Virus record (IMG/VR): IMGVR_UViG_3300044680_000280
Coordinates: 248,001 to 312,000 of that record
Length of the DNA stretch: 64,000 nt
Reading direction: 5' to 3' (one strand)
Made by a program: the position numbers and the translations under genes
The notes under the pieces: generated by a model
What the model saw: the letters and a program-made list of their open reading frames with translations, nothing else
Databases searched by the model: none
Told to the model about the DNA's origin: nothing
Shown: one piece after another, positions 1-56,031 of the stretch
How the letters are laid out: every line of letters begins with the position of its first letter
Position numbering within the stretch: position 1 is the first letter of the stretch

Positions 1-89
1 GTAGGTCAGCAATTTCCTGACTTGAATCCATGAGTTTAGGAATACACCGATCGACCTCCCGGTGTATGACAAACAAGAGGAGTACAATC

Positions 90-467
90 ATGGAAGAAGA
101 GCAGACGAAGACAGAGGAAACGCCGAAACCCCCGAGCTTTTACCGCAAGCACACGTTCTCGGTAAAGGGTCCGGGACGCAAGGAAACGAGCGCCTATCTT
201 ATGTCAAGGCAAATTCTCCTACCTCATCCCGTGGGAAGGCAACCGCTGACGAAGGCGCAGATCGACAAGTACTTCACGGAAACTAGAAACCGCCGATTCC
301 CAGAGCAGCGCGTGGCCAACCTCGAGTTGGTGCAACGTCAGCTCGACAAGGACACACGACGTCGTGCCCGCCTGAAGTTGGAGGGTAATGTCGTTGGAAC
401 AGTATCCGCGACGAACCTAGACGAGAAGGTCTCGGGGGAAATTCAGACGATCGCGCAAGAGTCGTGA
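90..467 (+). CDS. hypothetical protein
   Basis: ORF; ATG 90 follows GAGGAG and GGTGTA at 61-66. Confidence 0.7.
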   Translation: MEEEQTKTEETPKPPSFYRKHTFSVKGPGRKETSAYLMSRQILLPHPVGRQPLTKAQIDKYFTETRNRRFPEQRVANLELVQRQLDKDTRRRARLKLEGNVVGTVSATNLDEKVSGEIQTIAQES

Positions 468-751
468 TTTCCGAACGCCCGTTACCTGAACCTTGGTGGG
501 TCTACATTATCCAGGGGTCAGGTAACGGGCGTCTCTATACCGGCATCGCGAAGAACGTTGACAAACGACTGAAAGCCCACAACACGGGACGTGGGGCTAA
601 GTTCACTCGAATCGGCGGCCCGTGGTTCTGTATCTACAGAAAGGAGTATCCCTCACACGGGGACGCCATCCGAGAAGAGATACGAATTAAAAAGCTGACC
701 CGGGCGCAGAAGTTTCAACTGGCTCAAAGACCTCAAAGTCCTCTTCGATAG
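464..751 (+). CDS. GIY-YIG nuclease family protein (YhbQ/UPF0213-like)
   Basis: WWVYII...LYTGIAKNVDKRLKAHNTGRGAKFTR...AIREEIRIKKL. Confidence 0.9.
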   Translation: MISERPLPEPWWVYIIQGSGNGRLYTGIAKNVDKRLKAHNTGRGAKFTRIGGPWFCIYRKEYPSHGDAIREEIRIKKLTRAQKFQLAQRPQSPLR

Positions 752-2315
752 TCATTGCCATGTTGCGTTTGATCTCCGCAATCTTGTGTTTGGCAAAAAC
801 TCTCTTCGTTGCCAACTTGTGAAATTTGGGGTCTCGCTCGATTCCGATGAACTGACGGTTCTCTTCTGTAGCCGCCAGGCACGTCGTACCCGACCCGCAG
901 TAAGGATCGAGAACGACTCCTCCGACCGGCGTGACCAACTTGACGAGGTATTTCATCAGAGAAATAGGTTTTACGGTTGGGTGAAAGTTGGCTTCCTTAG
1001 GCACGTAATCGAGGTGCTCCAAGTACTTCTCTGGGATGTACTGAACGACCCACTCTTCGACCGCGCGCCCTGACTCCAAGGAGAAAGACGTGTCGAGACT
1101 GTCGTCACCCGGATTGAGGGCCAACATATTTCCTAGGGTCGCCTCCTCGATCTCAAAAAGGAGCTCTTCCGAGACGTCTTCTTTGACAATGTGCTCCTTG
1201 AGCTTGCTCTTCGGGAGACCCTCATTGCGTTCCTCCCTTGACGCTTTCGCCGCATAGAAGAACGGGGCCGCCGGCATAAACTGAACGAAGAAGCGAGCCA
1301 TACCGCCCGCATCTTTCGCAGAAGCACTTTGGGCATTCATTGTGGCGACCGGGCAACCCTCGACACATGCATAAAGGGCGACTTCTTCCTTGCCCTCGGC
1401 ATCGCCTGTCTTCATGCTCGTGTACGCATGACCCGCCCCGTGACCGAAGGGCTTCATGCCGTCATCGAATCGATTGATGATCGGGGCATCCACCTTCGCC
1501 GTCCCCGTCTGAGTGCATCCCTCCGCATGGGTGAGAACCGCGTTTGCTGGCCAACGGCCGCCCTCCTTGACGTCGTTGGCGCCCGAAAGATCGCTACTGT
1601 TCTTCCAGGAGTTGCCGAGAGACCCACCCTTTGCCTTGAGGGCGGAGACCATAGCCCTGTGCTGCTCGAGGTCTTTGGCGTTCGCGTGCTTCACCCGCGT
1701 CCCGTCGATGTTGATTCCACCCGTTCCCGTCTGGACAATCTGATCAGCAAGGGTGCCGCTGAACGGCTTCCGCATGCAAAGGATGGGCTCCCAAGCCGGT
1801 TTCAGCGCCGTACCGTACCCCTCAAACTGGTCCGCCCTGGCGAGCAGTTTGGCCTTCAGCTCCGGGTCTTCCGCAACCGCGGCCCGCTTGCGTAACTCCT
1901 TGGAAATGTTCATGGACTTGGGAAAGCCTTGCGCTTGAATCCATTGTAGGCAAGGGGATCCAAAGTACGACGAAATGGTGTCTCGGTTGTCGAACCCTGC
2001 GGCTCGGAGTCCGATGCTCATGACGTCCCAGGTTCGAGTCGAAGCGAAGCTCAAAACGTAGCCCCCTGGCTTGAGCACGCGGAGGCACTCACGCCAAACG
2101 GGCACGGAGGGGATGTCCCACTTGTAAGACATGAAGTCCCCGCCCATGTCGAGCGTCGACCCGCGAAGGTACGCTTCAATGTCCTCCTTCGTTGGCTCCC
2201 TCGTGCCCATCCCGTAGGGGGGATCCGTCACAATACTGTCGACGGAGTTGTCAGGAAGGGTCTTCAGAACTTCGAGGCAGTCACCATTAAGTATGACATT
2301 GGTGGACTCGGACAT
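687..2315 (-). CDS. DNA N4/N6 methyltransferase (beta class)
   Basis: Motif IV DPPY near N-terminus; HPTVKP and motif I DPYCGSG near C-terminus. Confidence 0.92.
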   Translation of the reverse strand: MSESTNVILNGDCLEVLKTLPDNSVDSIVTDPPYGMGTREPTKEDIEAYLRGSTLDMGGDFMSYKWDIPSVPVWRECLRVLKPGGYVLSFASTRTWDVMSIGLRAAGFDNRDTISSYFGSPCLQWIQAQGFPKSMNISKELRKRAAVAEDPELKAKLLARADQFEGYGTALKPAWEPILCMRKPFSGTLADQIVQTGTGGINIDGTRVKHANAKDLEQHRAMVSALKAKGGSLGNSWKNSSDLSGANDVKEGGRWPANAVLTHAEGCTQTGTAKVDAPIINRFDDGMKPFGHGAGHAYTSMKTGDAEGKEEVALYACVEGCPVATMNAQSASAKDAGGMARFFVQFMPAAPFFYAAKASREERNEGLPKSKLKEHIVKEDVSEELLFEIEEATLGNMLALNPGDDSLDTSFSLESGRAVEEWVVQYIPEKYLEHLDYVPKEANFHPTVKPISLMKYLVKLVTPVGGVVLDPYCGSGTTCLAATEENRQFIGIERDPKFHKLATKRVFAKHKIAEIKRNMAMTIEEDFEVFEPVETSAPGSAF

Positions 2316-2325
2316 ACCGAATCCA

Positions 2326-3159
2326 CTACACCGTCATCGTGCGCTCCTCGTGAACGAATTTCATGAGCACCGTCTTGATCTTGGGTTCGTAGATGGCTTT
2401 CCACGACTTGTAGGGCGCCTTGAGACCCTCCGCCTTGAGGTGGGGCAGCATGACGTCTTCCGTCTGCGCATGAGCCTTGAATCCGAGAATCTCAGCCGGA
2501 GTGTACCCCTCCATGAGGAGGTCGAGGTACAGGGGAGCGTCCGGATGCACGTGTTGCAGTGCCTGTCGGACCTTCGGAAGCACACTGGTCGGTAGATTGT
2601 GGTAGAAGTTTGCTTCGGACTCTGGGTCCCCCATCTGCATCGTGGGGTTTCCCTCCTCGTCGGTGTTGTCGATGGACGGACCGAAGTCATACTTCTTGCG
2701 CTTCGTCTTCTGAATGTCCGAGAGGACAACGTAGTTCAAGCTCTTCAAGAGGTACCTGAACACCTCTCCCAGCTTCGCCCCCTCCCTCAGCTCTTTCCAC
2801 CCACCTTCGACCACGAAGGCGAATAGCCAATTCGAGATAGCGACGTCGACTAACTGCTCGGAGTGGTATTTGGCGAGCAGACTCTTTCGGAGGTCCGCAG
2901 CAAAACCCCGAAGGTAATCCGCAGGAAGGAGTTTCGTCGGGTCCTTGTGCTGATCCACCGGAAATTCAAGTGCCGGCTTCCCGTGGATGTCGGGCAAGTC
3001 CTGAATCTTCTTGCGGATAAAAATGACCCCTAAAGATCGGCCGAGAGCCTGGAGTTCCACTCCTGAGAGGGACGCGATTACGTAAGCCAGTCGCATCCCG
3101 AGCGGGAGCGATGCAAAGATAGCTCGGGTTACACGTACCCCCCGACTTCGTACTTCCAT
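2326..3159 (-). CDS. divergent sigma-factor-like protein
   Basis: Region-2-like VFRYLLKSLNYVVLSDIQKTKRK; region-4-like LYLDLLMEGYTPAEI; adjacent to a second sigma-like gene. Confidence 0.45.
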   Translation of the reverse strand: MEVRSRGVRVTRAIFASLPLGMRLAYVIASLSGVELQALGRSLGVIFIRKKIQDLPDIHGKPALEFPVDQHKDPTKLLPADYLRGFAADLRKSLLAKYHSEQLVDVAISNWLFAFVVEGGWKELREGAKLGEVFRYLLKSLNYVVLSDIQKTKRKKYDFGPSIDNTDEEGNPTMQMGDPESEANFYHNLPTSVLPKVRQALQHVHPDAPLYLDLLMEGYTPAEILGFKAHAQTEDVMLPHLKAEGLKAPYKSWKAIYEPKIKTVLMKFVHEERTMTV

Positions 3160-3194
3160 CCTAAGAGTGTTGGGCGAATGAAAGGAAAACCGCT

Positions 3195-4322
3195 TCAGGC
3201 CATCGACGAGACGAAGATGTTTTCCTCTGCCAATTCCACATCTTCCTCAATGGTTACCGACTCTTCCATCAGGTCGTCGGTAATGACCTGATCCTCGGCA
3301 CCCGGAGTAGGACGCATTTGAATCTGTCGACGCTCGCGGGCGATGCGGACCCAAGGACGGAGCAGACGTTGAGTGAGGCGGAGGTCATCCGGAGATAGCT
3401 CGAGCTTGCGGACAGCTTCCTCGATGTCGTACCCTTCATTGATGAACTCGAAGATCTCTTCCGCACGGGCGGCGGCGGGACTCTTGGAGATCTCCCGGAG
3501 CAGAAGGCTGAGTTCGGCACGGGCTTCTTGATTGCAGGGGGTCTTATCCGGCAGTCGGCTTTCCCAGGAGAGGGAGTCCTCGACGAGCGGGCGGAGCTCC
3601 TGGAAGGTGTCCCAAACGCGCTCCTTGTTGTGTCGCTCCTCACCTCGGCAAAAGTTCTTGAAGCGATTGTGCACCGTCTTTGAAAGGTAGTTCTGAAAAT
3701 GCCGCCGGCTCTTGGGGACGATCGTGTTGTGGTCGAGCATGACCGCGTCCTCGAAGTACTCCATCTCACCGAGTCGAATGACCGCCGCGAGATTGTAGGT
3801 AGTGTGCTTGGAGTCCGCCTTGCCCTTCAAAGGAAGGACCATCCAAGGCTCCCGGGGAACCGTCGCAACGAACGTCTTGATCGCGTCACGAAACCGTTCC
3901 CACGTGATTCCAAGGGCCTTGTGGGCTTGTTCCCCGGTGATCGTCTCCGGAACGACGACGTTGCTCTGCTCGAGAAATCGTTCGATCGCGCGGGCTTGCT
4001 TCAGTTGGAGAAAGATCTCCTGAACGATGTCACGCGTTCGGCTGTTCGCCGTGACCTTGTTGTAACGACTGATCAGGTGAACGACGAGGGCGCCGTAGAG
4101 GCGAATGAACTGGTCGTACACTTCGCGCTTGTCGAGAGACCGTATGTCGAAAATGGCCTGAATGTAGTCAGCGTAAATCGGGTCGAACGTTTCGGATTCC
4201 ACCTCGGAGCTTCGATGTCGTCGAACCTTTCGAATTCCTGTGATCTCGTCTTGGAAATCCTCCGCATCAGGTGCGTCGGGGGTGAGATTGACGACGTTCG
4301 AGGCTTGGTTTCGAATTGACAT
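3195..4322 (-). CDS. ECF-like sigma factor with insertion in region 2
   Basis: DIVQEIFLQL (2.2-like), FQNYLSKTVHNRFKNFCR (2.3/2.4-like), FEFINEGYDIEEAVRKLELS (region 4-like). Confidence 0.65.
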   Translation of the reverse strand: MSIRNQASNVVNLTPDAPDAEDFQDEITGIRKVRRHRSSEVESETFDPIYADYIQAIFDIRSLDKREVYDQFIRLYGALVVHLISRYNKVTANSRTRDIVQEIFLQLKQARAIERFLEQSNVVVPETITGEQAHKALGITWERFRDAIKTFVATVPREPWMVLPLKGKADSKHTTYNLAAVIRLGEMEYFEDAVMLDHNTIVPKSRRHFQNYLSKTVHNRFKNFCRGEERHNKERVWDTFQELRPLVEDSLSWESRLPDKTPCNQEARAELSLLLREISKSPAAARAEEIFEFINEGYDIEEAVRKLELSPDDLRLTQRLLRPWVRIARERRQIQMRPTPGAEDQVITDDLMEESVTIEEDVELAEENIFVSSMA

Positions 4323-4396
4323 TTTAGTGGTTCTCCGATTTGTACCCGAAAGGTGGCCAACACACGGGCGTATGGTGTAAGTTTAAGAAGAGCAAG

Positions 4397-5834: not shown

Positions 5835-6136
5835 GGATCACACCGATTGAACCGGAGGCTCTACGGGGTCTTCCACGCACGATCTCGATGGGAGGAACGA
5901 AGCACGTCTCGGTCTACCACGGGACGCCCCTCGAGATGGTCCGCAGCATGGCTTCTGAGATGGGGTTGGGTACGGACGTACACGAAGCCGTCTCCACACT
6001 ACTAGACGCTCTGGGGCGCAACCGCGGCGTTCTGATCGCCATCCCTGAGGATGCTCCCGAGGACGTCGTCGCAACCCTCTTCGTTTACGCGCTCCTCGAC
6101 TCGGGTGTCTCTCGGGCGGTTACGGCTGAGAGCTGA
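5831..6136 (+). CDS. hypothetical protein
   Basis: ATGA overlap with upstream gene. Confidence 0.65.
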   Translation: MRITPIEPEALRGLPRTISMGGTKHVSVYHGTPLEMVRSMASEMGLGTDVHEAVSTLLDALGRNRGVLIAIPEDAPEDVVATLFVYALLDSGVSRAVTAES

Positions 6137-6749
6137 ACATTTTGAACGCCTGGGACTCTACAGGTCCCTCTGCGAGGTTTTCCTTGTACTTCCCAGTCTG
6201 TGAGTACAATTTTTCAACCTCACCCGAAATAGTGTGGAAACGAACCTGACCGATTCTCATGCCAGGGTATAGACGTACGGGGTAAGTGCAGGTAACCTCT
6301 AAAGTTAGCTGACCCGAAAACCCGGGGTCACAGAAGCCAGCGGTTTCATGGATGCTCACAAAAAGTCGCCCGATACTGCTCTTTCCGTCGAGCACGGGGA
6401 CAAACTCGTCGGTGCTGATCCGCTCCTTAGTGTGCATCAAGTAGCCGATCCCGGGTTTCAGGACCCAACCCTCGACTGGGTCGATCCTGAACCGACGGAT
6501 CTTGTTCGGCTTCCGAACGTCGAGGATGGCGGACTTAAAGCCATAGATGGGAACGAGGTTTCGACCGTCGGGGACCTCGTCAGCACCAGACGGAAGCGAG
6601 TAAGTTACAGCCTCGTACACCGCGACGTGCTCACCGAGGGTGACGTCGTAGCTCGTGGGGTTGACCTGGTCGGGGTCGAACGGGTCGATTTTGATACGAA
6701 ACTCGCTAATCGCGTTAAGAATGCCCCGATCGGAGAGAATGCCGTCCAT
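6120..6749 (-). CDS. dcd: dCTP deaminase
   Basis: QVNPTSYDVTLG, GKSSIGRL, AGFCDPGFSGQLTLE, GMRIGQ; start set at ATG 6749, 11 nt after GGTGTA. Confidence 0.92.
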   Translation of the reverse strand: MDGILSDRGILNAISEFRIKIDPFDPDQVNPTSYDVTLGEHVAVYEAVTYSLPSGADEVPDGRNLVPIYGFKSAILDVRKPNKIRRFRIDPVEGWVLKPGIGYLMHTKERISTDEFVPVLDGKSSIGRLFVSIHETAGFCDPGFSGQLTLEVTCTYPVRLYPGMRIGQVRFHTISGEVEKLYSQTGKYKENLAEGPVESQAFKMFSSQP

Positions 6750-6973: not shown

Positions 6974-7492
6974 ATGGTAGATACGTTGTCATTACGTTAC
7001 TGGCCGGACCCGGTGCTGAACAAAAAGTGCGCTGAGGTTCCGGAGGTCACCGACGAGATCCGTGCCGTTGCCAAGGGCATGCTTGACATCATGTACAAGC
7101 AGGGCGGAATCGGTCTGGCGGCCCCGCAAGTCGGGCGACTCATCCGGATGATCGTCGTGGACGTTTGGTGGCCGAAAACGGGCGCGCGAAATCCCCGGGT
7201 CTTCATCAATCCACTACTGACACTGGGCGAGGAGAAGGAACGAGCTCGCGAGGGTTGTCTATCCCTCCCGGGTATCACGGACTTTGTCACGAGATCAAAG
7301 AGTGTTCAGGTTCACGCGCTGGATGAGCATGGCAAGCCCGTCATGCAACACGCGGACGGACTTCTTGCGGTTTGCCTCCAGCACGAGTGTGAGCACCTCG
7401 ACGGTATCACGCTTGTCGAGCACATGGGGCGGGCGAACCGTCGGATCCTAAAAAAGCAAATGCAGTCCAAGCGACCGCCCCGTCCGGTGTAA
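6974..7492 (+). CDS. def: peptide deformylase
   Basis: GIGLAAPQVG, EGCLS, QHECEHLDG motifs. Confidence 0.95.
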   Translation: MVDTLSLRYWPDPVLNKKCAEVPEVTDEIRAVAKGMLDIMYKQGGIGLAAPQVGRLIRMIVVDVWWPKTGARNPRVFINPLLTLGEEKERAREGCLSLPGITDFVTRSKSVQVHALDEHGKPVMQHADGLLAVCLQHECEHLDGITLVEHMGRANRRILKKQMQSKRPPRPV

Positions 7493-7770: not shown

Positions 7771-7965
7771 ATGGACCCGTTTACCATCATCGCAATCTTC
7801 GTGCTCATCGGGTACGCTCTTCGGCAACGGCAGAAGGCCAAGGCCGAACGCGAGGTTCGCCTCCGGGTCGAGCTCAAAAACGCGGCTCTCCTGGCCGAGA
7901 TTGAGCGCCAGGGATTCGAGTTCCGCAGCGCATTCAACAACGGACTGGATCTGCACGTCCACTAG
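7771..7965 (+). CDS. small membrane-anchored protein
   Basis: N-terminal hydrophobic helix followed by charged helix. Confidence 0.6.
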   Translation: MDPFTIIAIFVLIGYALRQRQKAKAEREVRLRVELKNAALLAEIERQGFEFRSAFNNGLDLHVH

Positions 7966-9782
7966 GACAGTAGGTTCAAGAACGTCAAGAAAAGGTCTTC
8001 CCTCTGGGTCGAGGACAAGACAGACTTGAAGCTATCGAGCTGATCCCGAGTCATGTCGTACTCGAGCACGTAGTGGGCAAAAACCTCGGCGAACGCCTCG
8101 TCGATGTTGCTCTTACCGTAGTCGGACACGGGGGTGACGGGACGCTCGTCCGTCTCATACTCCTCGTGGTAAGCTTTCCAGGCATCTCCGACGCGGGCCC
8201 CCTGCGCCTTGTTGAACTCGTCGACTGCGATGTCAATGTACTTGTCAGCTTTGGTCACAGCCTCGACGATCTTTTCCTCGTAGCCGTCGAGCCATTCGGA
8301 CAAGTGTTTCTGAAAAACCTCCATCCAGTAGGCGTCGAAACTCTTCGGCTTTTGACTGGGTTCGGGCTCTGAGTGAATCTTCTTTGAAATGTCCTCGTCA
8401 AAATCAAAGGCGTACCTCTGAACGGCGCTGCTAGCCGTGAGCATTTCATCAAAGGCATGCTTCGTTGTAGGATTCAATGTTGACGAGGCGCCAGCGGAGT
8501 GCACCGCGTCAAGCATGTCGTTGTAAAATGTCCAGCCCGCCTTGGAGACCCGTTCGAAATTCTCCTTGAGGATGTCTCGAAAAAAGCTCTTCTTGGGAAA
8601 AGGGGACGTCAACGGGTCCAGGGACGATCGAACGGCCTTGGCGGCGGCTTGAACCTTTTCTTTGGCTGCTCTCACCGCATCGTTCAAAATGAGAATCGCC
8701 TTACCTGTCGGTTTTGGTTTCTTGTGCACCCTCACCAAGGATTCGAACTTCCCTCTTTGAGACTGGCTCATGAACTTGAACCAGTAGCGGTGCCCGAGCT
8801 CATGAGCCATCAGCTCGACAATGAACCAACTCGGTCGGTTGAACACATTGACGACGTCGGGTCCAATAGGGTAGTTTCCACCCACGCCGCCACCCGTGTT
8901 GTAATTGACCCCTCCACAATCGTTGCAGGAGATGTACACGGTTCCGTACCAAACCTTGTCCAGACGTTTTGCCTTGAGTTTGTGGTACGCCTCCGTCAGG
9001 TACTTGACGTAGTCCTTCACATTTTCTGGCGTTACGGTCAGATCTCGTATAACGACTTTGATGCCATGCAGCTCAAACTGGGTGTGAGTGTCTAGTTTGT
9101 CCTCGGAGTATACGGTCTGAAGCACATCCTTCAGGTGATCGATCCAACTGATGGGATCCACCTTCAAAGCCTTCTTGTCGATGGTGATCAGTCTCTTGAT
9201 GGCTGCATCCAGGTTCAATCGTTTGAAGAGGCCGTACTTCTCATTGAGTCGACTGTAGTCATTGTTCCGACTCCGCTCCAAAGCATCGATCTCGACGGGG
9301 GTCGCCTTTTTGAGCACCTTCTTTGCCAGGGCCACAACAGCTTCCCTGTCGACTTTCCAAACGCCTTTGAGAGCGATTTGAAGACTCGGCACCTTCTCCT
9401 CAAACATCGTCTGTACTTTGGATGTGATTGAGTTGAAAATCTCGTCTTCAACCGTTTGGACTGGATACACGCTATCAATCGCCCGATCAAGCAGAGCGTA
9501 GGAAGCCGATATCTCTTTGAGAGGCTCCTCGATCATCGAGAACCTCATATCGATTGATTGCTCGGCAAACTGGTGGATTCCAAAATTGACTAAGTCCGTT
9601 TTGAATTTTTTGTAGAAGGCTAGGAGGTCGCCAATCTTCCACGACACCTCTCGATTGCTGTCTAGCTTATCCGTAAGGATCTTCTTTAGCTCAGCCTTCT
9701 TCTCCCGCCAGAACTTGTCGGGGATGAACCCACCCGTTCGCAGAAGGAATCGTCGAGCGACACGTTTTGCGAGCTGATCCAC
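7962..9782 (-). CDS. zincin-like metallopeptidase domain protein
   Basis: AHELGH zinc motif plus distal DYGKSNIDEAFAEVF; N-terminal AKRVARRFL. Confidence 0.65.
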   Translation of the reverse strand: MDQLAKRVARRFLLRTGGFIPDKFWREKKAELKKILTDKLDSNREVSWKIGDLLAFYKKFKTDLVNFGIHQFAEQSIDMRFSMIEEPLKEISASYALLDRAIDSVYPVQTVEDEIFNSITSKVQTMFEEKVPSLQIALKGVWKVDREAVVALAKKVLKKATPVEIDALERSRNNDYSRLNEKYGLFKRLNLDAAIKRLITIDKKALKVDPISWIDHLKDVLQTVYSEDKLDTHTQFELHGIKVVIRDLTVTPENVKDYVKYLTEAYHKLKAKRLDKVWYGTVYISCNDCGGVNYNTGGGVGGNYPIGPDVVNVFNRPSWFIVELMAHELGHRYWFKFMSQSQRGKFESLVRVHKKPKPTGKAILILNDAVRAAKEKVQAAAKAVRSSLDPLTSPFPKKSFFRDILKENFERVSKAGWTFYNDMLDAVHSAGASSTLNPTTKHAFDEMLTASSAVQRYAFDFDEDISKKIHSEPEPSQKPKSFDAYWMEVFQKHLSEWLDGYEEKIVEAVTKADKYIDIAVDEFNKAQGARVGDAWKAYHEEYETDERPVTPVSDYGKSNIDEAFAEVFAHYVLEYDMTRDQLDSFKSVLSSTQREDLFLTFLNLLS

Positions 9783-11238: not shown

Positions 11239-11287
11239 ATGCCATTTTTACACCAACATGATTCACATGCCGGTGTATGTGCCGCGC

Positions 11288-19962: not shown

Positions 19963-19998
19963 GACCCTCCCTTACACCACTTGGTGTAATAGCCCCAT

Positions 19999-25968: not shown

Positions 25969-26244
25969 ATGGCAAAGAAAAGCGCTCGCGGTAGGACGGA
26001 ACTGGTCCACGTTGTTCACGCGTACGACGTTAACCTCAGCGAGACCACGCGGTCTCCCAGCACCGTCGTCTGGCGCCGCATCTCTCGGGCGCTCATGAGC
26101 GACGGTGTGATTCTCGAGAAGGTCGACATCCGGTTCGAGGATGGGCAGAAACACTCCTACGGCTGGAAGGTTAAGGACAAGTCGGAGCTCTCTCCGGCAG
26201 AGTTCACCGCGGACTACGTCGAACGAGGTTGGGAGGTCAAATAG
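25969..26244 (+). CDS. hypothetical protein
   Basis: ORF in cluster. Confidence 0.65.
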   Translation: MAKKSARGRTELVHVVHAYDVNLSETTRSPSTVVWRRISRALMSDGVILEKVDIRFEDGQKHSYGWKVKDKSELSPAEFTADYVERGWEVK

Positions 26245-26283
26245 TTCGGGGTGGGCTTCACCGCCCCGGTGTATTGAAGGGGT

Positions 26284-28987: not shown

Positions 28988-29058
28988 GGCTTTGATCTCC
29001 CTGTTTTCGTGTCGTATTCCCTATCAGTACACCGGGGCGACCGCGAAAAAATCAGAAA

Positions 29059-30258
29059 TCAGAACTTTGATGGGTCGCCCCACTGGCTCAGGGCTTCCTT
29101 GAGCTCCTCATGGAGCGAGGCGGGCTCCGTGGTCAGGGCGTCGAGCAAAAGTTTGATGGCGACCCCACCGTGCGCCCCCAAATGCCCGCCCCGCATCTTT
29201 GTGAGGTTCTTGGGTACCTTGTCGTTTGGATCATAGCTGAACACGGCAAGAACGAATCCATTCTTCTTCAGGTTCTCCACGGTTGCCGCAGCAAGTTTCA
29301 CGCCAGCTTTCCCGTCGACACTGACGTAGTAGTCGAAGTACTCGTAGCCGAACATTTGTTTACCTTGGGCGGCCCGCTCCTTCTTGAGCTCTCTCGCCAT
29401 CGCCAGGTTGTACACGGGGGTAACTTCGACGTTGGTCTTTCTACCCGACATAGACGGGTGGTCCTTGGACACGAGCCCGCTCGAGATCAGAATGTCCTTC
29501 AGGCTTGCACCGCCCGAACCCATTTTCACACTCAAGACAGTACTCTCGTTGAGCTCACCCCCTGGCCACGCAATGTACTTTTGAGGCGCCTTGCGGACCG
29601 TGCCCCCGTCCCCGAATTCCATTACCTCTCGGACGAGCTTTGGACACAATTTCGTTAGGTCCGACTTCAGAGGACCCTCGGTAAAATGACCCAGCCAGTC
29701 CGACTCGATGATCACGTTTCCAGACTTGTCGGCGTCAAAAACGGTGTTCGCCCCGCGATGGCGAACACCCTCGGCGATCAACTTGTTTTCAATTCGACCA
29801 AAGACAACCCACATATCCGCGGACCAACCCCGTTCCTTGTAGCTCATCCATTCGGGCTTCGAAATGAAGAGCCACTCAACCCCGCTAGGATGGTGGACCC
29901 CTTCCGCAAAGTTTTTGCCCTTGATCGTGTCGACAACAGGCGGGGGCTCCCTCTTCGGACGATCGGGCGTTGGGGAACGTTCGGGACGCCACTCGCTCCG
30001 AGGAGCTGATGCCCCCGCTTTGAGGAGGTAGTCCTTTGCCATGTTGATCGCCACAAGAGCCTCGTGGCTACCGCCCTTGTCGGGATGGTTTTCCAGGGCT
30101 TTTTGGCGCCAGTTCTTGGTGATTTCCTCGGCAGAGGGCGTGTCCTTCGGATCGAAACCGAGAAGTTTGAGCGCGCGTTCTCGGGTCATGTCCCCAACAT
30201 ACTGCCACGCCAGCTTCTCCAGGTATCGTTGGGCAACTCGGGACGCAATACGGCTCAT
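29059..30258 (-). CDS. J-domain (DnaJ-like) protein with long uncharacterised C-terminus
   Basis: ALKLLG...EEITKNWRQKALENHPDKGGS...AINMAKDYL; N-terminal ASRVAQRYL. Confidence 0.85.
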   Translation of the reverse strand: MSRIASRVAQRYLEKLAWQYVGDMTRERALKLLGFDPKDTPSAEEITKNWRQKALENHPDKGGSHEALVAINMAKDYLLKAGASAPRSEWRPERSPTPDRPKREPPPVVDTIKGKNFAEGVHHPSGVEWLFISKPEWMSYKERGWSADMWVVFGRIENKLIAEGVRHRGANTVFDADKSGNVIIESDWLGHFTEGPLKSDLTKLCPKLVREVMEFGDGGTVRKAPQKYIAWPGGELNESTVLSVKMGSGGASLKDILISSGLVSKDHPSMSGRKTNVEVTPVYNLAMARELKKERAAQGKQMFGYEYFDYYVSVDGKAGVKLAAATVENLKKNGFVLAVFSYDPNDKVPKNLTKMRGGHLGAHGGVAIKLLLDALTTEPASLHEELKEALSQWGDPSKF

Positions 30259-30445: not shown

Positions 30446-30462
30446 GGTGTAGTGGGTTCGGT

Positions 30463-32129: not shown

Positions 32130-32173
32130 ACTAAACTAGTACACCGAATCAGTGTACCGGGAGACAAGAATCC

Positions 32174-37412: not shown

Positions 37413-37565
37413 TTACACCGGAGAGGGGGGCTCAACCGCCCCTTTTTTGCCCTCGAGTATCCGTTTCACACGAAGCTCCCGCTGGGCCAGCTTGAGCAAG
37501 ATCTCCATCACCGCGAGTTCGAGCCGATCGTACTCCCTGTTGGCTGAGGTCGAGATGCTCTCCAT
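37413..37565 (-). CDS. small hypothetical protein (not in ORF track)
   Basis: MESISTSANREYDRLELAVMEILL..., fills the gap between co-oriented genes. Confidence 0.5.
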   Translation of the reverse strand: MESISTSANREYDRLELAVMEILLKLAQRELRVKRILEGKKGAVEPPSPV

Positions 37566-41483: not shown

Positions 41484-41511
41484 GCCCTAGAGATACACCG
41501 AAACGAGACTA

Positions 41512-56001: not shown

Positions 56002-56031
56002 CCATTTAAACCCTCGGTGTAATGCCTCTCC

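What the first reader, a model, noticed from the sequence alone, without database searches (positions are those of the whole stretch)
2326..4322. Two tandem divergent sigma-like genes, one with a ~100-residue insertion splitting region 2
In 3195-4322, DIVQEIFLQL and FQNYLSKTVHNRFKNFCR are separated by about 100 residues (roughly 10-15 in typical ECF sigmas). The insert contains an HTH-like segment, ITGEQAHKALGITWERFRDAI. Gene 2326-3159 has weaker region-2 and region-4-like segments. Inference: these are the natural candidates to read the GGTGTA promoter, and the inserted domain would be an unusual sigma architecture.
Basis: inference. Interest (0 to 1): 0.65.

Follow-up and report, generated by a model that had tools for sequence, protein, structure and literature searches.

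The report
Phage sigma factor with inserted winged-helix
A very large phage (record of 407 kb) encodes a sigma-type transcription initiation factor whose promoter-opening domain is interrupted by an extra DNA-binding-like domain of about 95 residues, and which is always followed by a distantly related partner gene; I found no description of this layout, and it may be how these phages redirect the host RNA polymerase.

Summary
ORF 3195-4322(-) encodes 375 aa in which DIVQEIFLQL (aa 97-106) and FQNYLSKTVHNRFKNFCR (aa 209-226) lie 102 residues apart.

The protein founds a family of at least 195 cluster representatives. All 66 members examined carry an insert of at least 83 aa at this site. In relatives, Pfam finds the two halves of Sigma70_r2 on either side of the insert and Sigma70_r4 at the C-terminus.

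A confident AF2 model (pLDDT 81.7) matches mainly sigma factors. Those sigma-2 matches skip the insert, which on its own resembles excisionase/MerR-type winged helices. A co-fold with E. coli beta-prime clamp helices passes with the canonical region 2.1/2.2 interface (0.61 against 0.01 for the best control), and the insert lies outside it.

The second gene, 2326-3159(-), is a distant paralogue of the C-terminal half (hhalign 86%) with no sigma hits of its own. The pair, plus a methylase and a GIY-YIG gene, stays syntenic down to about 25% identity.

GGTGTA is real: 327 copies, about 130-150 of them 10-11 nt before a start codon, without a Shine-Dalgarno. This geometry fits leaderless promoters. 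The link to this sigma remains an inference, and two other sigma-like genes exist in the genome.

Verdict: new variant of a known kind.

The parts
3195..4322 (-). Gene for the 375-aa split-region-2 sigma-like protein (P0001)
   Evidence: ORF. The family was found (195 representatives at E<=1e-3). Sigma assignment.
4331..4336 (-). GGAGAA Shine-Dalgarno-type element 8 nt upstream of the ATG of the sigma-like gene. No GGTGTA lies on this strand upstream.
   Evidence: Sequence read. GGAGAA is the third most enriched upstream hexamer of the genes without the motif.
4197..4322 (-). N-terminal aa 1-42: low-confidence, poorly conserved extension
   Evidence: pLDDT 50-58. Absent or different in relatives.
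3990..4136 (-). Sigma regions 2.1-2.2 (aa 63-111; helices 65-87 and 93-109), the predicted beta-prime clamp-helix binding surface
   Evidence: Pfam Sigma70_r2 positions 2-38, above the cut-off in relatives. Co-fold interface residues 66-74 and 94-109.
3708..3989 (-). Insert (aa 112-205) between regions 2.2 and 2.3. The core, aa 124-192 (3747-3953), folds as strand-helix-helix-strand-strand-helix, a winged helix-turn-helix.
   Evidence: Present at >=83 aa in 66 of 66 members. pLDDT 85-96. Structural matches are TniQ wHTH Z 5.6, 7lxs_A Z 5.5 and excisionases Z 4.9; MerR-like, excisionase and PrtN proteins at prob 0.85-0.99. Sequence searches are inconclusive.
3621..3707 (-). Sigma regions 2.3/2.4 helix (aa 206-234). 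It holds the family's invariant N223, R226 and R230 and the near-invariant F209, Y212 and L213.
   Evidence: Invariant columns. P0048 equivalent matches Sigma70_r2 positions 44-71 at 27.4 bits. 18 of 64 isolated segments hit Sigma70_r2. Sigma-2 structural alignments span 50/63..~231 while aligning only 80-90 residues.
3531..3620 (-). Flexible sigma-2 to sigma-4 linker (aa 235-264)
   Evidence: pLDDT 56-76. No sigma-3 domain was detected.
3315..3530 (-). Sigma-4-like domain of four helices with an HTH (aa 265-336)
   Evidence: pLDDT 94-97. Family-level hits to Sigma70_r4, r4_2, GerE and HTH_23. PDB profile hits to LuxR-type HTHs and sigma-H region 4. Full-length sigma alignments reach residue about 330.
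2326..3159 (-). Gene for the 277-aa partner protein (the database version starts at aa 22 and has 256 aa). It is co-conserved directly downstream of the sigma-like gene.
   Evidence: ORF. Relatives' N-termini support the long form. Synteny. The L014 orthologue gives hhalign 99.8%.
2479..2880 (-). Part of the partner (aa 94-227) that aligns to region 2.3/2.4, the linker and the start of region 4 of the split-sigma family
   Evidence: hhalign 69%, rising to 86.4%, E 4.7e-6, with the deeper alignment.
2327..2332 (-). GGTGTA overlapping the partner gene's stop codon, 11 nt upstream of the ATG (2315) of the methylase gene
687..2315 (-). N6/N4 DNA methyltransferase gene, third gene of the conserved cluster; it is led by GGTGTA
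   Evidence: Pfam N6_N4_Mtase, 2.1e-29. Synteny.
464..751 (+). GIY-YIG gene, convergent with the methylase gene; a conserved neighbour of the cluster
   Evidence: Pfam GIY-YIG, 5.2e-17. Synteny.

Best explanation
Gene 3195-4322(-) encodes a phage sigma-70-family initiation factor with the two-domain, ECF-like layout: sigma-2, a linker and sigma-4, with no region 1.1 and no sigma-3.

Its sigma-2 domain is interrupted, between the core-binding helix (region 2.2) and the helix that recognises and melts the -10 element (regions 2.3/2.4), by a folded domain of about 95 residues. That domain has an excisionase/MerR-type winged helix-turn-helix fold.

Shown or predicted here:
- Both sigma domains are present.
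- The insert is conserved across the family.
- Regions 2.1/2.2 dock on the beta-prime clamp helices in the canonical way, and the insert stays out of that interface.

Inferred:
- The factor binds the host core RNA polymerase, because no phage RNAP was detected.
- In ECF sigmas the loop at this position shapes -10 specificity (my recollection of the sigma-E work, not checked here). The inserted winged helix would therefore sit next to the upstream edge of the -10 element and could contact the duplex there, a role played by sigma-3 and extended -10 contacts in larger sigmas.
- The most plausible targets are the (C/T)GGTGTA sites. If TA is -12/-11, a discriminator of 6-7 nt puts the transcription start on the A of the start codon, giving leaderless mRNAs.

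The 277-aa protein encoded directly downstream is a diverged paralogue of the sigma's C-terminal half. Because the pair is always kept together, it probably works with the sigma as a cofactor, a regulator or a second sigma-like subunit.

My sub-probabilities:
- Sigma-family protein with a folded insert in region 2: about 0.85-0.9.
- The insert is a DNA-binding winged helix: about 0.6.
- The factor reads the GGTGTA class: about 0.4.
- The partner binds the sigma or RNAP: about 0.4.

The overall confidence of 0.7 refers to the core claim: a sigma factor that acts on the host core enzyme and has a functional domain inserted in sigma-2.
For: Sequence:
- Sigma70_r2 matches positions 2-38 in P0001.
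- 28 of 66 family members hit Sigma70_r2 (best 1e-8), and a few hit r4, r4_2, GerE or HTH_23.
- The first half of r2 is above the cut-off in P0074 and P0036. The second half and r4 are above the cut-off in P0048, with about 93 residues between the halves.
- 18 of 64 isolated post-insert segments hit Sigma70_r2.
- The sigma-factor families phrog_1740 and phrog_351 are hit by 8 members.
- The PDB profile finds S. aureus SigB regions 2.1-2.2 and LuxR/sigma-H region-4 HTHs.

Structure:
- The AF2 model has pLDDT 81.7.
- In the exhaustive VIA search about half of the top 50 chains are sigma factors (SigB Z 8.0, pro-sigma-K 7.3, RpoE 7.1, sigma-E region 2 6.2, T4 gp55 6.0). Sigma-2 alignments span residues about 50-231 while aligning only 80-90 residues.
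- The insert matches winged helices of TniQ, small-terminase, excisionase, MerR and PrtN type.

Binding:
- Co-fold with E. coli beta-prime 230-345 gives a median score of 0.61 against 0.01 for the best control. This mark was reached by 58 of 80 solved complexes and 2 of 110 mismatched pairs.
- The interface is beta-prime 271-298 against residues 66-74 and 94-109.

Conservation:
- The insert is at least 83 aa in 66 of 66 members.
- The family's invariant residues lie in the 2.3/2.4 helix.
- The order sigma, partner, (methylase), GIY-YIG is kept down to about 25% identity.

Context:
- No Pfam RNAP beta or beta-prime hit in the 407-kb record.
- The sigma gene itself has an SD-type leader and no GGTGTA.
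- GGTGTA occurs 327 times, with a peak at 10-11 nt before start codons and no SD in between.
- ATG makes up 88% of starts in the motif class against 63% in the strong-SD class, p=1e-5.
- The other genes are enriched for SD hexamers.
- The motif has the same geometry in relatives L011, L013 and L014.
Against: - P0001 itself reaches no Pfam cut-off (19.7 bits against 24). The sigma assignment leans on relatives and on structure.
- Foldseek gave no match at E<=0.001.
- VIA Z scores are at most 8, a range the tool warns can reflect common helical arrangements.
- One of three co-fold runs scored 0.00, so the runs' minimum contact agreement is 0%. The beta-prime is from E. coli because the host is unknown. 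Solved sigma/beta-prime complexes mean a pass shows likeness, not binding.
- The winged-helix assignment of the insert is structural only. The insert-only profile finds nothing in the PDB, and HTH_17 appears in 3 of 46 members at E>=0.016.
- No -35-like element accompanies GGTGTA, although the protein has a sigma-4 domain.
- Two other proteins with canonical region-4 HTHs are encoded elsewhere in the genome.
- The motif is the same in all relatives, so there is no covariation linking it to this protein.
Confidence: 0.7

Rival explanations
1. The protein is a real sigma factor with the insert, but it does not read GGTGTA. In this reading the motif is used by the host's own sigma, by one of the phage's other sigma-like proteins (212 aa at C1:187892-188530 or 379 aa at C1:395783-396922), or by an undetected phage polymerase. 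This sigma would then serve another, unrecognised promoter class.
For: - Two further genes have region-4 hits above the cut-off.
- No -35-like signal lies next to GGTGTA, although this protein has a sigma-4 domain.
- The motif does not change across phages whose sigma is only 25-55% identical, as a host-determined signal would behave.
- Genes led by the motif include nucleotide-metabolism and DNA-modification genes, which could belong to any temporal class.
Against: - The family's most conserved residues lie in the -10-recognition helix, which matches an unchanging motif.
- The sigma gene itself lies outside the motif class, as expected of the factor that switches that class on.
- GGTGTA does not resemble the usual sigma-70 -10 hexamer (my knowledge).
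- The motif and the sigma family co-occur in every related contig examined.
Confidence: 0.35
2. The two adjacent proteins form one bipartite factor. The partner, a degenerate sigma paralogue, would be an obligate second subunit or co-activator, in the manner of T4 gp55/gp33, SPO1 gp33/gp34, SigO/RsoA or Tn916 Sig7/Sig8. Neither protein would be active alone.
For: - Strict adjacency, with a gap of about 25-35 nt, is kept from 55% down to about 25% identity.
- The partner shows distant homology to region 2.4 through region 4.
- Precedents for two-subunit sigmas are reviewed in bioRxiv 10.64898/2026.10.01.756105.
Against: - Unlike the known split sigmas, the 375-aa protein already has both sigma-2 and sigma-4.
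- No interaction test was run, because the single complex job went to the beta-prime test.
- The partner has no Pfam, PDB or PHROG sigma hit.
- Conserved adjacency alone is weak evidence of binding.
Confidence: 0.25
3. The protein is a sigma-derived decoy or regulator rather than an initiation factor. It would occupy the beta-prime clamp helices to displace host sigma and shut off the host, or act as a stand-alone DNA-binding regulator through its HTH domains.
For: - The only interaction predicted is with the clamp helices.
- P0001's own sigma-domain scores are below the cut-off.
- A large insert at the -10 specificity loop could in principle abolish promoter melting.
Against: - The strongest conservation is in the region 2.3/2.4 helix, which recognises and melts the -10 element (N223, R226, R230, F209, Y212, L213). 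A pure decoy would not need this.
- Sigma-4 is retained with high model confidence.
- The family is large and under clear purifying selection.
Confidence: 0.1
4. GGTGTA is a signal for translation or RNA processing rather than a promoter. The sigma-like proteins would then have nothing to do with it.
For: - The fixed spacing of 10-11 nt to the start codon is also what a ribosome-binding or processing signal would show.
- It occurs before about a quarter of the genes, some inside same-strand gene arrays.
Against: - Only GGTG could pair with the canonical anti-SD, and it lies too far from the start codon. The conserved TA and the preceding C or T are not explained by such pairing (anti-SD sequence from my own knowledge).
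- The other genes use ordinary GGAGG-type SDs.
- The spacing equals that of a -10 hexamer plus a 6-7 nt discriminator.
- ATG is strongly preferred.
- Back-to-back divergent copies occur at 43/61, 11249/11272 and 19973/19983.
Confidence: 0.2

Closest known systems
ECF (group 4) sigma factors, for example E. coli sigma-E, AlgU, SigW, SigK
   Same: - Two-domain layout of sigma-2, linker and sigma-4, without region 1.1 or sigma-3.
- Region 2.2 motif D-[IL]-V-Q-E and region 2.3/2.4 motif F..YL...V.N.F.N..R...R.
- These sigmas are the best structural matches for sigma-2.
- The predicted clamp-helix interface is the canonical one.
   Different: - A folded insert of 83-223 residues sits where ECF sigmas have a loop of about 10 residues between regions 2.2 and 2.3.
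- Pfam Sigma70_ECF is hit by only 1 of 66 members.
- No anti-sigma gene was recognised nearby.
- The family is found on contigs that look like those of very large phages.
Phage-encoded sigma factors (PHROG 1740 and 351; T4 gp55; SPO1 gp28 and gp34; jumbo-phage 'group 2' sigmas)
   Same: - Encoded by a phage that has no detectable RNA polymerase of its own, so presumably redirects the host core enzyme (PMC7824862).
- Some family members hit the phage sigma PHROGs.
- T4 gp55 is among the structural matches (Z 6.0).
- A single promoter element near -10 would recall T4 late promoters (my knowledge).
   Different: - The jumbo-phage review describes only minimal one-HTH sigmas and RpoD-like sigmas, with no domain inserted in region 2.
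- No tblastn match in 50,697 deposited phage genomes.
- P0001 itself matches no PHROG.
Two-subunit (split) sigma factors: T4 gp55/gp33, SPO1 gp33/gp34, B. subtilis SigO/RsoA, Tn916 Sig7/Sig8
   Same: Two adjacent, co-conserved genes that both show sigma-related sequence. The concept is reviewed in bioRxiv 10.64898/2026.10.01.756105.
   Different: In this case one protein carries both sigma-2 and sigma-4. What is 'split' is region 2 within a single chain, by an insert, and not the sigma across two chains. An interaction between the two proteins was not tested.
Excisionase, MerR, PrtN and TniQ-type winged helix-turn-helix domains (Pfam HTH_17 class)
   Same: The insert core (aa 124-192) has the same strand-helix-helix-wing-helix topology. 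It superposes at 2.4-3.7 A over 54-67 residues.
   Different: - It is embedded inside another domain instead of standing alone or at a terminus.
- Sequence similarity is not significant.
- DNA binding is not shown.

Membership tests
Sigma-70 family | Sigma-2 domain, regions 2.1-2.2 (core-binding helices) | tested here: met
   - P0001 aa 73-111 match Sigma70_r2 positions 2-38 at 19.7 bits, below the cut-off of 24.
- Relatives are above the cut-off: P0074 35.3 bits, P0036 26.7 bits.
- 28 of 66 members hit the family.
- Structural matches to many sigma-2 domains at Z 5-7.3 and rmsd 2.5-4 A.
Sigma-70 family | Sigma-2 domain, regions 2.3-2.4 (-10 recognition and melting helix) | tested here: met
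   - P0048 residues 143-170 match Sigma70_r2 positions 44-71 at 27.4 bits, above the cut-off of 24.
- 18 of 64 isolated post-insert segments hit Sigma70_r2.
- The family's invariant N223, R226 and R230 lie here.
- P0001's own segment gives no Pfam hit, so this is met at family and structure level only.
Sigma-70 family | Sigma-4 domain with an HTH | tested here: met
   - Sigma70_r4 at 24.3 bits against a cut-off of 24.1 in P0048; r4, r4_2, GerE and HTH_23 in several members.
- PDB profile hits to LuxR-type HTHs and sigma-H region 4.
- Alignments to full-length sigmas extend to residue about 330.
- P0001 itself has no Pfam hit in this region.
Sigma-70 family | Binds core RNA polymerase through the beta-prime clamp helices | tested here: met
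   In silico only.
- Co-fold with RPOC_ECOLI 230-345: runs 0.61, 0.00 and 0.69 (median 0.61), best control 0.01.
- This mark was reached by 58 of 80 solved complexes and 2 of 110 mismatched pairs.
- Partner pLDDT at least 71; minimum contact agreement between runs 0%.
- Interface: beta-prime 271-298 with residues 66-74 and 94-109.
- This shows likeness to solved sigma/beta-prime complexes, not binding.
Sigma-70 family | Confers promoter-specific initiation on core polymerase | not testable with these tools
   Needs in vitro transcription or in vivo 5'-end mapping.
ECF (group 4) sigma factors | Only sigma-2 and sigma-4, joined by a short linker | tested here: met
   No region 1.1 or sigma-3 was detected. 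The linker of 30 residues (aa 235-264) has low confidence.
ECF (group 4) sigma factors | Compact, uninterrupted sigma-2 with a short loop between regions 2.2 and 2.3 | tested here: not met
   The insert is 83-223 residues long in all 66 members and is folded with pLDDT 85-96.
ECF (group 4) sigma factors | Matches ECF-specific sequence models (Sigma70_ECF, Sigma70_r4_2) | tested here: not met
   Sigma70_ECF is hit by 1 of 66 members and Sigma70_r4_2 by 1 of 66.
Two-subunit split sigma factors | Sigma-2 and sigma-4 functions lie on separate polypeptides | tested here: not met
   The 375-aa protein carries both domains.
Two-subunit split sigma factors | The two subunits associate with each other and with RNA polymerase | not tested
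Only co-conservation of adjacency is shown.
Excisionase/MerR-type winged HTH (for the insert) | Winged-helix fold of this class | tested here: met
   - VIA: 7u5d_I Z 5.6 (rmsd 2.4 over 58 residues), 7lxs_A Z 5.5, 8c3t_A excisionase Z 4.9, 8dgl_A Z 4.9.
- BFVD: PrtN prob 0.97, MerR-like prob 0.94, excisionase prob 0.85.
- Foldseek E-values are weak (>=0.06) because the whole model was the query.
Excisionase/MerR-type winged HTH (for the insert) | Sequence membership (Pfam HTH_17, MerR) | tested here: inconclusive
   HTH_17 is hit by 3 of 46 insert segments at E>=0.016. The insert profile finds nothing in the PDB.
Sigma-70 family (for the 277-aa partner) | Recognisable sigma-2 and sigma-4 domains | tested here: inconclusive
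   - hhalign against the split-sigma family gives 86.4%, E 4.7e-6, over region 2.4 to the start of region 4.
- No Pfam, PDB or PHROG hit.
- The nearest Atlas structure clusters are Sigma70_r2 families, but at TM 0.30-0.39 from a poor model.
- One distant member carries the JGI name 'sigma24 family'.

The most novel reading that the evidence does not exclude
This would be a new architectural class of sigma factor, widespread in very large phages. A duplex-binding winged helix built into sigma-2, at the -10 specificity loop, would take over the upstream promoter contact. That would allow compact single-element promoters, (C/T)GGTGTA with TA at -12/-11, that start transcription on the start codon and so produce a leaderless regulon of 100-150 genes. 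The factor would work together with an obligate, degenerate sigma paralogue encoded next to it.
Probability: 0.25. Interest if true: 0.8.

Novelty: new variant of a known kind. Interest (0 to 1): 0.64.

Why it matters
Sigma factors are among the best-studied DNA-binding proteins, and their sigma-2 domain is regarded as a compact, conserved module. Known elaborations lie at the ends or between domains (my knowledge).

In this family an independently folded winged helix sits inside sigma-2, exactly where ECF sigmas set their -10 specificity. That raises a testable question about how promoter recognition can be rebuilt.

The family has at least 195 sequence clusters. It lies on contigs of up to the 0.2-1 Mb class and keeps the same gene order, so it is probably a core part of the gene-expression programme of an uncultured lineage of very large phages.

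If it proves to drive the GGTGTA class, it would explain a large leaderless regulon. It would also offer a compact orthogonal pair of sigma and promoter.

I found no description of this layout in the papers searched. That library is incomplete, so prior description cannot be excluded.

Tried and rejected
Searches that led nowhere:
- tblastn of both proteins against 50,697 deposited phage genomes: no match.
- First AF2 model, from 4 sequences: pLDDT 58, and its Foldseek result was uninformative. It was replaced by the 66-sequence model.
- Foldseek against the PDB with the good model: nothing at E<=0.001. The exhaustive VIA search was needed.
- Insert-only profile against the PDB and Pfam: nothing significant.
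- Profile of the post-insert helix against the PDB: nothing, probably because it is too short.
- ESM Atlas by features and by shape: no cluster with the same layout; leads only.
- The search for related loci: alignment A2 was too diverse to use. A1 found no relatives in viral contigs or genome contigs.

Ideas considered and rejected:
- GGTGTA as a Shine-Dalgarno. Only GGTG could pair with the anti-SD, the spacing is too long, the flanking C/T and the TA are conserved, and the other genes use ordinary SDs.
- The HTH_17 hits in whole-protein scans as evidence about the insert. They fall on the C-terminal region-4 HTH, not on the insert.
- A phage-encoded multisubunit RNA polymerase. No Pfam beta or beta-prime hit, although very divergent enzymes of the phiKZ type could be missed.
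- Host flanks in the 'provirus' record. GC content and motif density give no sign of them.


Full report
**Setting**

The window is bases 248001-312000 of a 406,734-bp IMG/VR virus record. The same protein is also seen on a 463,523-bp contig. GC content is even along the record, 0.535-0.572, and nothing suggests host flanks. No tRNA lies in the window. No Pfam-detectable RNA polymerase beta or beta-prime is found anywhere in the record. The neighbourhood of the finding is typical of a phage: an N6/N4 DNA methylase, a GIY-YIG protein, and frames that resemble dCTP deaminase and peptide deformylase.

**The observation**

Two minus-strand ORFs lie 35 nt apart: 3195-4322 (375 aa, P0001) and 2326-3159 (277 aa). 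In P0001:
- DIVQEIFLQL is aa 97-106.
- FQNYLSKTVHNRFKNFCR is aa 209-226, so 102 residues lie between the two.
- The HTH-like ITGEQAHKALGITWERFRDAI is aa 128-148.

Pfam finds Sigma70_r2 in P0001 below the cut-off (19.7 bits against 24). The match covers only profile positions 2-38 of 71, at aa 73-111. This is what a region 2 broken after 2.2 should give.

**A family, not a one-off**

The word-based search found three relatives at 42-56% identity. An exhaustive HMMER search with their profile found 195 cluster representatives at E<=1e-3 and 158 at E<=1e-10. Many proteins of 250-310 aa match profile positions about 45-297 in a single stretch.

I aligned 66 of them (A2):
- 28 of the 66 hit Sigma70_r2 (best 1e-8). 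Smaller numbers hit Sigma70_r4, r4_2, GerE or HTH_23.
- P0074 and P0036 match the first half of r2 (positions 1-37) above the cut-off, at 35.3 and 26.7 bits.
- P0048 matches the second half (positions 44-71) at residues 143-170 with 27.4 bits, and Sigma70_r4 at 241-264 with 24.3 bits.
- The two halves of region 2 are therefore both present, about 93 residues apart.
- The segment between them is 83-223 residues long (median 106) in all 66 members.
- Scanned on their own, 18 of 64 post-insert segments of 45 residues hit Sigma70_r2. No other family is hit by more than two.
- The only invariant residues of the family (N223, R226, R230) and three of the near-invariant ones (F209, Y212, L213) lie in this post-insert helix. 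The other near-invariant residues P162, P164 and G167 lie in the insert.
- The phage sigma families phrog_1740 and phrog_351 are hit by 8 members, but not by P0001.
- A PDB profile search finds S. aureus SigB regions 2.1-2.2 at the N-terminus and LuxR-type and sigma-H region-4 HTHs at the C-terminus.

**Structure**

With the 66-row alignment AF2 gives mean pLDDT 81.7, with 216 residues at 90 or above. The model reads as follows:
- Helices 65-87 and 93-109: regions 2.1 and 2.2.
- A compact unit made of strand 127-129, helices 130-137 and 141-154, strands 164-166 and 175-177, and helix 178-186.
- A long helix 206-234: regions 2.3/2.4.
- A low-confidence linker, 235-264.
- A four-helix C-terminal domain, 265-336.

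Foldseek against the PDB gave nothing at E<=0.001. The exhaustive VIA search is dominated by sigma factors:
- SigB Z 8.0, pro-sigma-K 7.3, RpoE 7.1, sigma-28 7.0, AlgU 6.7, SigE 6.5, BldN 6.4, SigK and SigW 6.3, sigma-E region 2 6.2, T4 gp55 6.0, and more.
- The sigma-2 matches span model residues about 50/63 to 231 but align only 80-90 residues at 3-4 A. They step over the insert.
- The Z values lie in the range that the tool warns can arise from common helical arrangements. I weigh them only together with the sequence evidence.

The insert on its own (aa 124-192) matches:
- a TniQ winged helix (Z 5.6, rmsd 2.4 over 58 residues), a small DNA-packaging protein (Z 5.5) and two excisionases (Z 4.9);
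- MerR-family and Xis chains at the top of the Foldseek list;
- in the viral library, PrtN, MerR-like and excisionase proteins at probability 0.85-0.99.

Sequence searches with the insert alone are not significant. The winged-helix assignment is therefore structural only.

**Core binding**

- The three runs scored 0.61, 0.00 and 0.69, median 0.61. The best of three controls scored 0.01.
- The tool's mark was reached by 58 of 80 solved complexes and by 2 of 110 mismatched pairs.
- The partner chain's pLDDT was at least 71. The minimum contact agreement between runs is 0%, because one run failed.
- The confident interface is beta-prime 271-298 (the clamp helices) against residues 66-74 and 94-109. 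These are regions 2.1 and 2.2, including the DIVQEIFLQLKQ helix.
- No insert residue is in the interface.

Sigma/beta-prime complexes have been solved, so this result shows that the surface is sigma-like. It does not show that this protein binds.

**The second gene**

Fourteen relatives were found at first, and nineteen with the profile search, some on contigs of 250-536 kb. Their N-termini support the 277-aa reading over the 256-aa database version.

There are no Pfam, PDB or PHROG hits at any depth.

Profile-profile comparison with the split-sigma family gives 69%. With a deeper alignment it gives 86.4% and E 4.7e-6 over 120 columns. The aligned stretch is FRYLLKSLNYVVLSDIQKTKRKK against FQNYLSKTVHNRFKNFCRGEERHNKE, continuing to YLDLLMEGYTPAEILG against IFEFINEGYDIEEAVR.

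By eye, the preceding SEQLVDVAISNWLFAFVVEGGW resembles an uninterrupted region 2.2. This is my reading and was not tested.

The Atlas's own poor model has Sigma70_r2 clusters as its nearest neighbours at TM 0.30-0.39. One distant member carries the JGI name 'sigma24 family'.

I conclude that it is probably a diverged paralogue. That it is a sigma factor is not shown.

**Synteny**

The order sigma-like gene, partner gene (gap of about 25-35 nt), usually the methylase, and GIY-YIG on the other strand, with dCTP deaminase a few kb upstream, is kept in:
- L011, sigma 42% identical;
- L013, 36%;
- L014 and a 237-kb contig, about 27%;
- a 13.6-kb contig, 28%.

The L014 downstream gene is a clear orthologue of the partner (hhalign 99.8%, E 3.5e-30). 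The two genes therefore form a conserved module in a lineage of very large phages.

**The GGTGTA element**

- It is enriched about fourfold in the window: 64 copies against 14.7 expected. The genome holds 327 copies, densest between 200 and 406 kb.
- The distance from the motif's end to the next start codon that opens a frame peaks sharply at 10 nt (63 cases) and 11 nt (41 cases). Depending on the counting rule, 129-151 copies fall at 9-12 nt.
- The extended consensus has C (70%) or T (24%) just before GGTGTA and a weak A/T patch about 25 nt upstream. There is no -35-like block and no SD between the motif and the start codon.
- The remaining genes carry ordinary SDs. All the top enriched upstream hexamers are of GGAG type, and the same holds in relative L011.
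- If the TA of the motif is taken as -12/-11, a standard discriminator of 6-7 nt places +1 on the A of the start codon at exactly the observed spacings. The transcripts would then be leaderless.
- In line with this, ATG makes up 88% of starts in the motif class against 63% in the strong-SD class (Fisher p=1.3e-5, with crude gene calls).
- Motif-led genes in the window include the methylase, the dCTP-deaminase-like frame, a dCMP deaminase, an NT5C nucleotidase, an HNH protein and a VWA protein.
- The motif, with the same geometry, also occurs in L011, L013 and L014, including before the dCTP-deaminase orthologue.

In favour:
- The sigma gene has a GGAGAA leader and no GGTGTA, so it belongs to the other expression class.
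- Its most conserved residues lie in the -10-recognition helix.
- The motif and the family co-occur in every contig examined.

Against, or open:
- Nothing covaries.
- The protein keeps a sigma-4 domain although no -35 element is visible.
- Two other genes have region-4 hits above the cut-off: a 212-aa protein with two such HTHs at C1:187892-188530 and a 379-aa protein at C1:395783-396922.

I put the link at about 0.4.

**Mechanism proposed**

Inference is marked as such.
- The protein binds the host core enzyme through regions 2.1/2.2 (predicted).
- Regions 2.3/2.4 recognise and open the -10-like TA (inferred from the family's conservation and from general knowledge of sigma factors).
- The insert occupies the position of the short loop between 2.2 and 2.3. 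In sigma-E that loop forms part of the pocket for the flipped -10 base and sets specificity (my recollection of the sigma-E region 2/-10 DNA work behind PDB 4lup and 2mao; not checked in a paper here).
- A winged helix at that place would lie beside the duplex just upstream of -12. It could read the CGGTG part of the motif, much as sigma-3 reads an extended -10 element (inference).
- The partner may stabilise or regulate this factor, or act as a second subunit (inference from co-conservation).

**Comparison with what is known**

- The layout is ECF-like but fails the ECF criterion of a compact sigma-2. It also fails the ECF-specific Pfam models.
- It is not a split sigma in the sense of T4 gp55/gp33, SPO1 gp33/gp34, SigO/RsoA or Tn916 Sig7/Sig8, because one chain holds both domains.
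- A comparative review of jumbo phages lists only minimal one-HTH sigmas and RpoD-like sigmas (PMC7824862).
- My literature searches found no sigma with a domain inserted in region 2. The library is incomplete, so this is absence of evidence only.

**Verdict**

The main interpretation, an unusual sigma architecture, is well supported at family and structure level. The second gene is related but is not established as a sigma. The promoter link is plausible but untested.

I class the finding as a new variant of a known kind, with an interest score of about 0.64.

Noticed in passing
whole genome G000:C1; in the window for example 2327-2332(-), 19983-19988(+), 26268-26273(+), 30446-30451(+), 32140-32145(-), 41494-41499(-), 56016-56021(+): There are two classes of gene start. 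About 100-150 genes have (C/T)GGTGTA 10-11 nt before the start codon, no SD and 88% ATG. About 160 genes have strong GGAG-type SDs. The geometry fits a -10-like element that fires leaderless mRNAs.
   Followed up: partly
window 43-48(-)/61-66(+), 11249-11254(-)/11272-11277(+), 19973-19978(-)/19983-19988(+): Back-to-back divergent GGTGTA pairs, only 4-17 nt apart, each facing its own gene. These are very compact divergent control regions.
   Followed up: no
G000:C1 1-200000 compared with 200000-406734: The first 200 kb is almost entirely made of minus-strand, SD-led gene arrays with few motifs (4-14 per 20 kb). The second half has short units on alternating strands and 14-33 motifs per 20 kb. 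The genome seems to have two parts that are organised differently for expression.
   Followed up: partly
G000:C1:187892-188530(-) and 395783-396922(-), outside the window: Two more proteins have sigma region-4 HTHs above the Pfam cut-offs. One is 212 aa with two such HTHs in tandem; the other is 379 aa with one at its C-terminus. They are alternative candidates for phage promoter-specificity factors.
   Followed up: partly
window 687-2315(-): The N6/N4 methyltransferase matches the 221-position Pfam model from residue 25 to 503. The catalytic domain therefore carries an insertion of roughly 260 residues. In relatives the orthologue is 513-702 aa long.
   Followed up: no
L014:795-815, 2351-2371, 5961-6000: In the distant relative L014 a different shared element, (GGTCGGCYC)GTAGTAGG, lies just upstream of three genes, one of them its split-sigma gene. 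The window's genome has only 9 copies of GTAGTAGG, and none before its own sigma gene.
   Followed up: partly
window 6974-7492(+) and 6120-6749(-): A frame of 172 aa carries the peptide-deformylase motifs GIGLAAPQ, EGCLS and HECEH (read from the translation; not run through Pfam). Beside it lies a dCTP-deaminase-like gene led by GGTGTA, whose orthologues in L011 and L014 are also led by the motif.
   Followed up: partly
window 7962-9782(-): A 606-aa ORF contains an HELGH motif of the zinc-metallopeptidase type, followed by a glycine-rich stretch. It was not analysed further.
   Followed up: no
window 26240-26273, 37419-37450(-), 29033-29080(-): Several GGTGTA copies are immediately preceded by a G+C-rich inverted repeat, for example GGGGTGGGCTTCACCGCCCC before 26268. 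A hairpin may therefore abut the motif. Whether it is a terminator of the upstream unit or part of the control element is not known.
   Followed up: no
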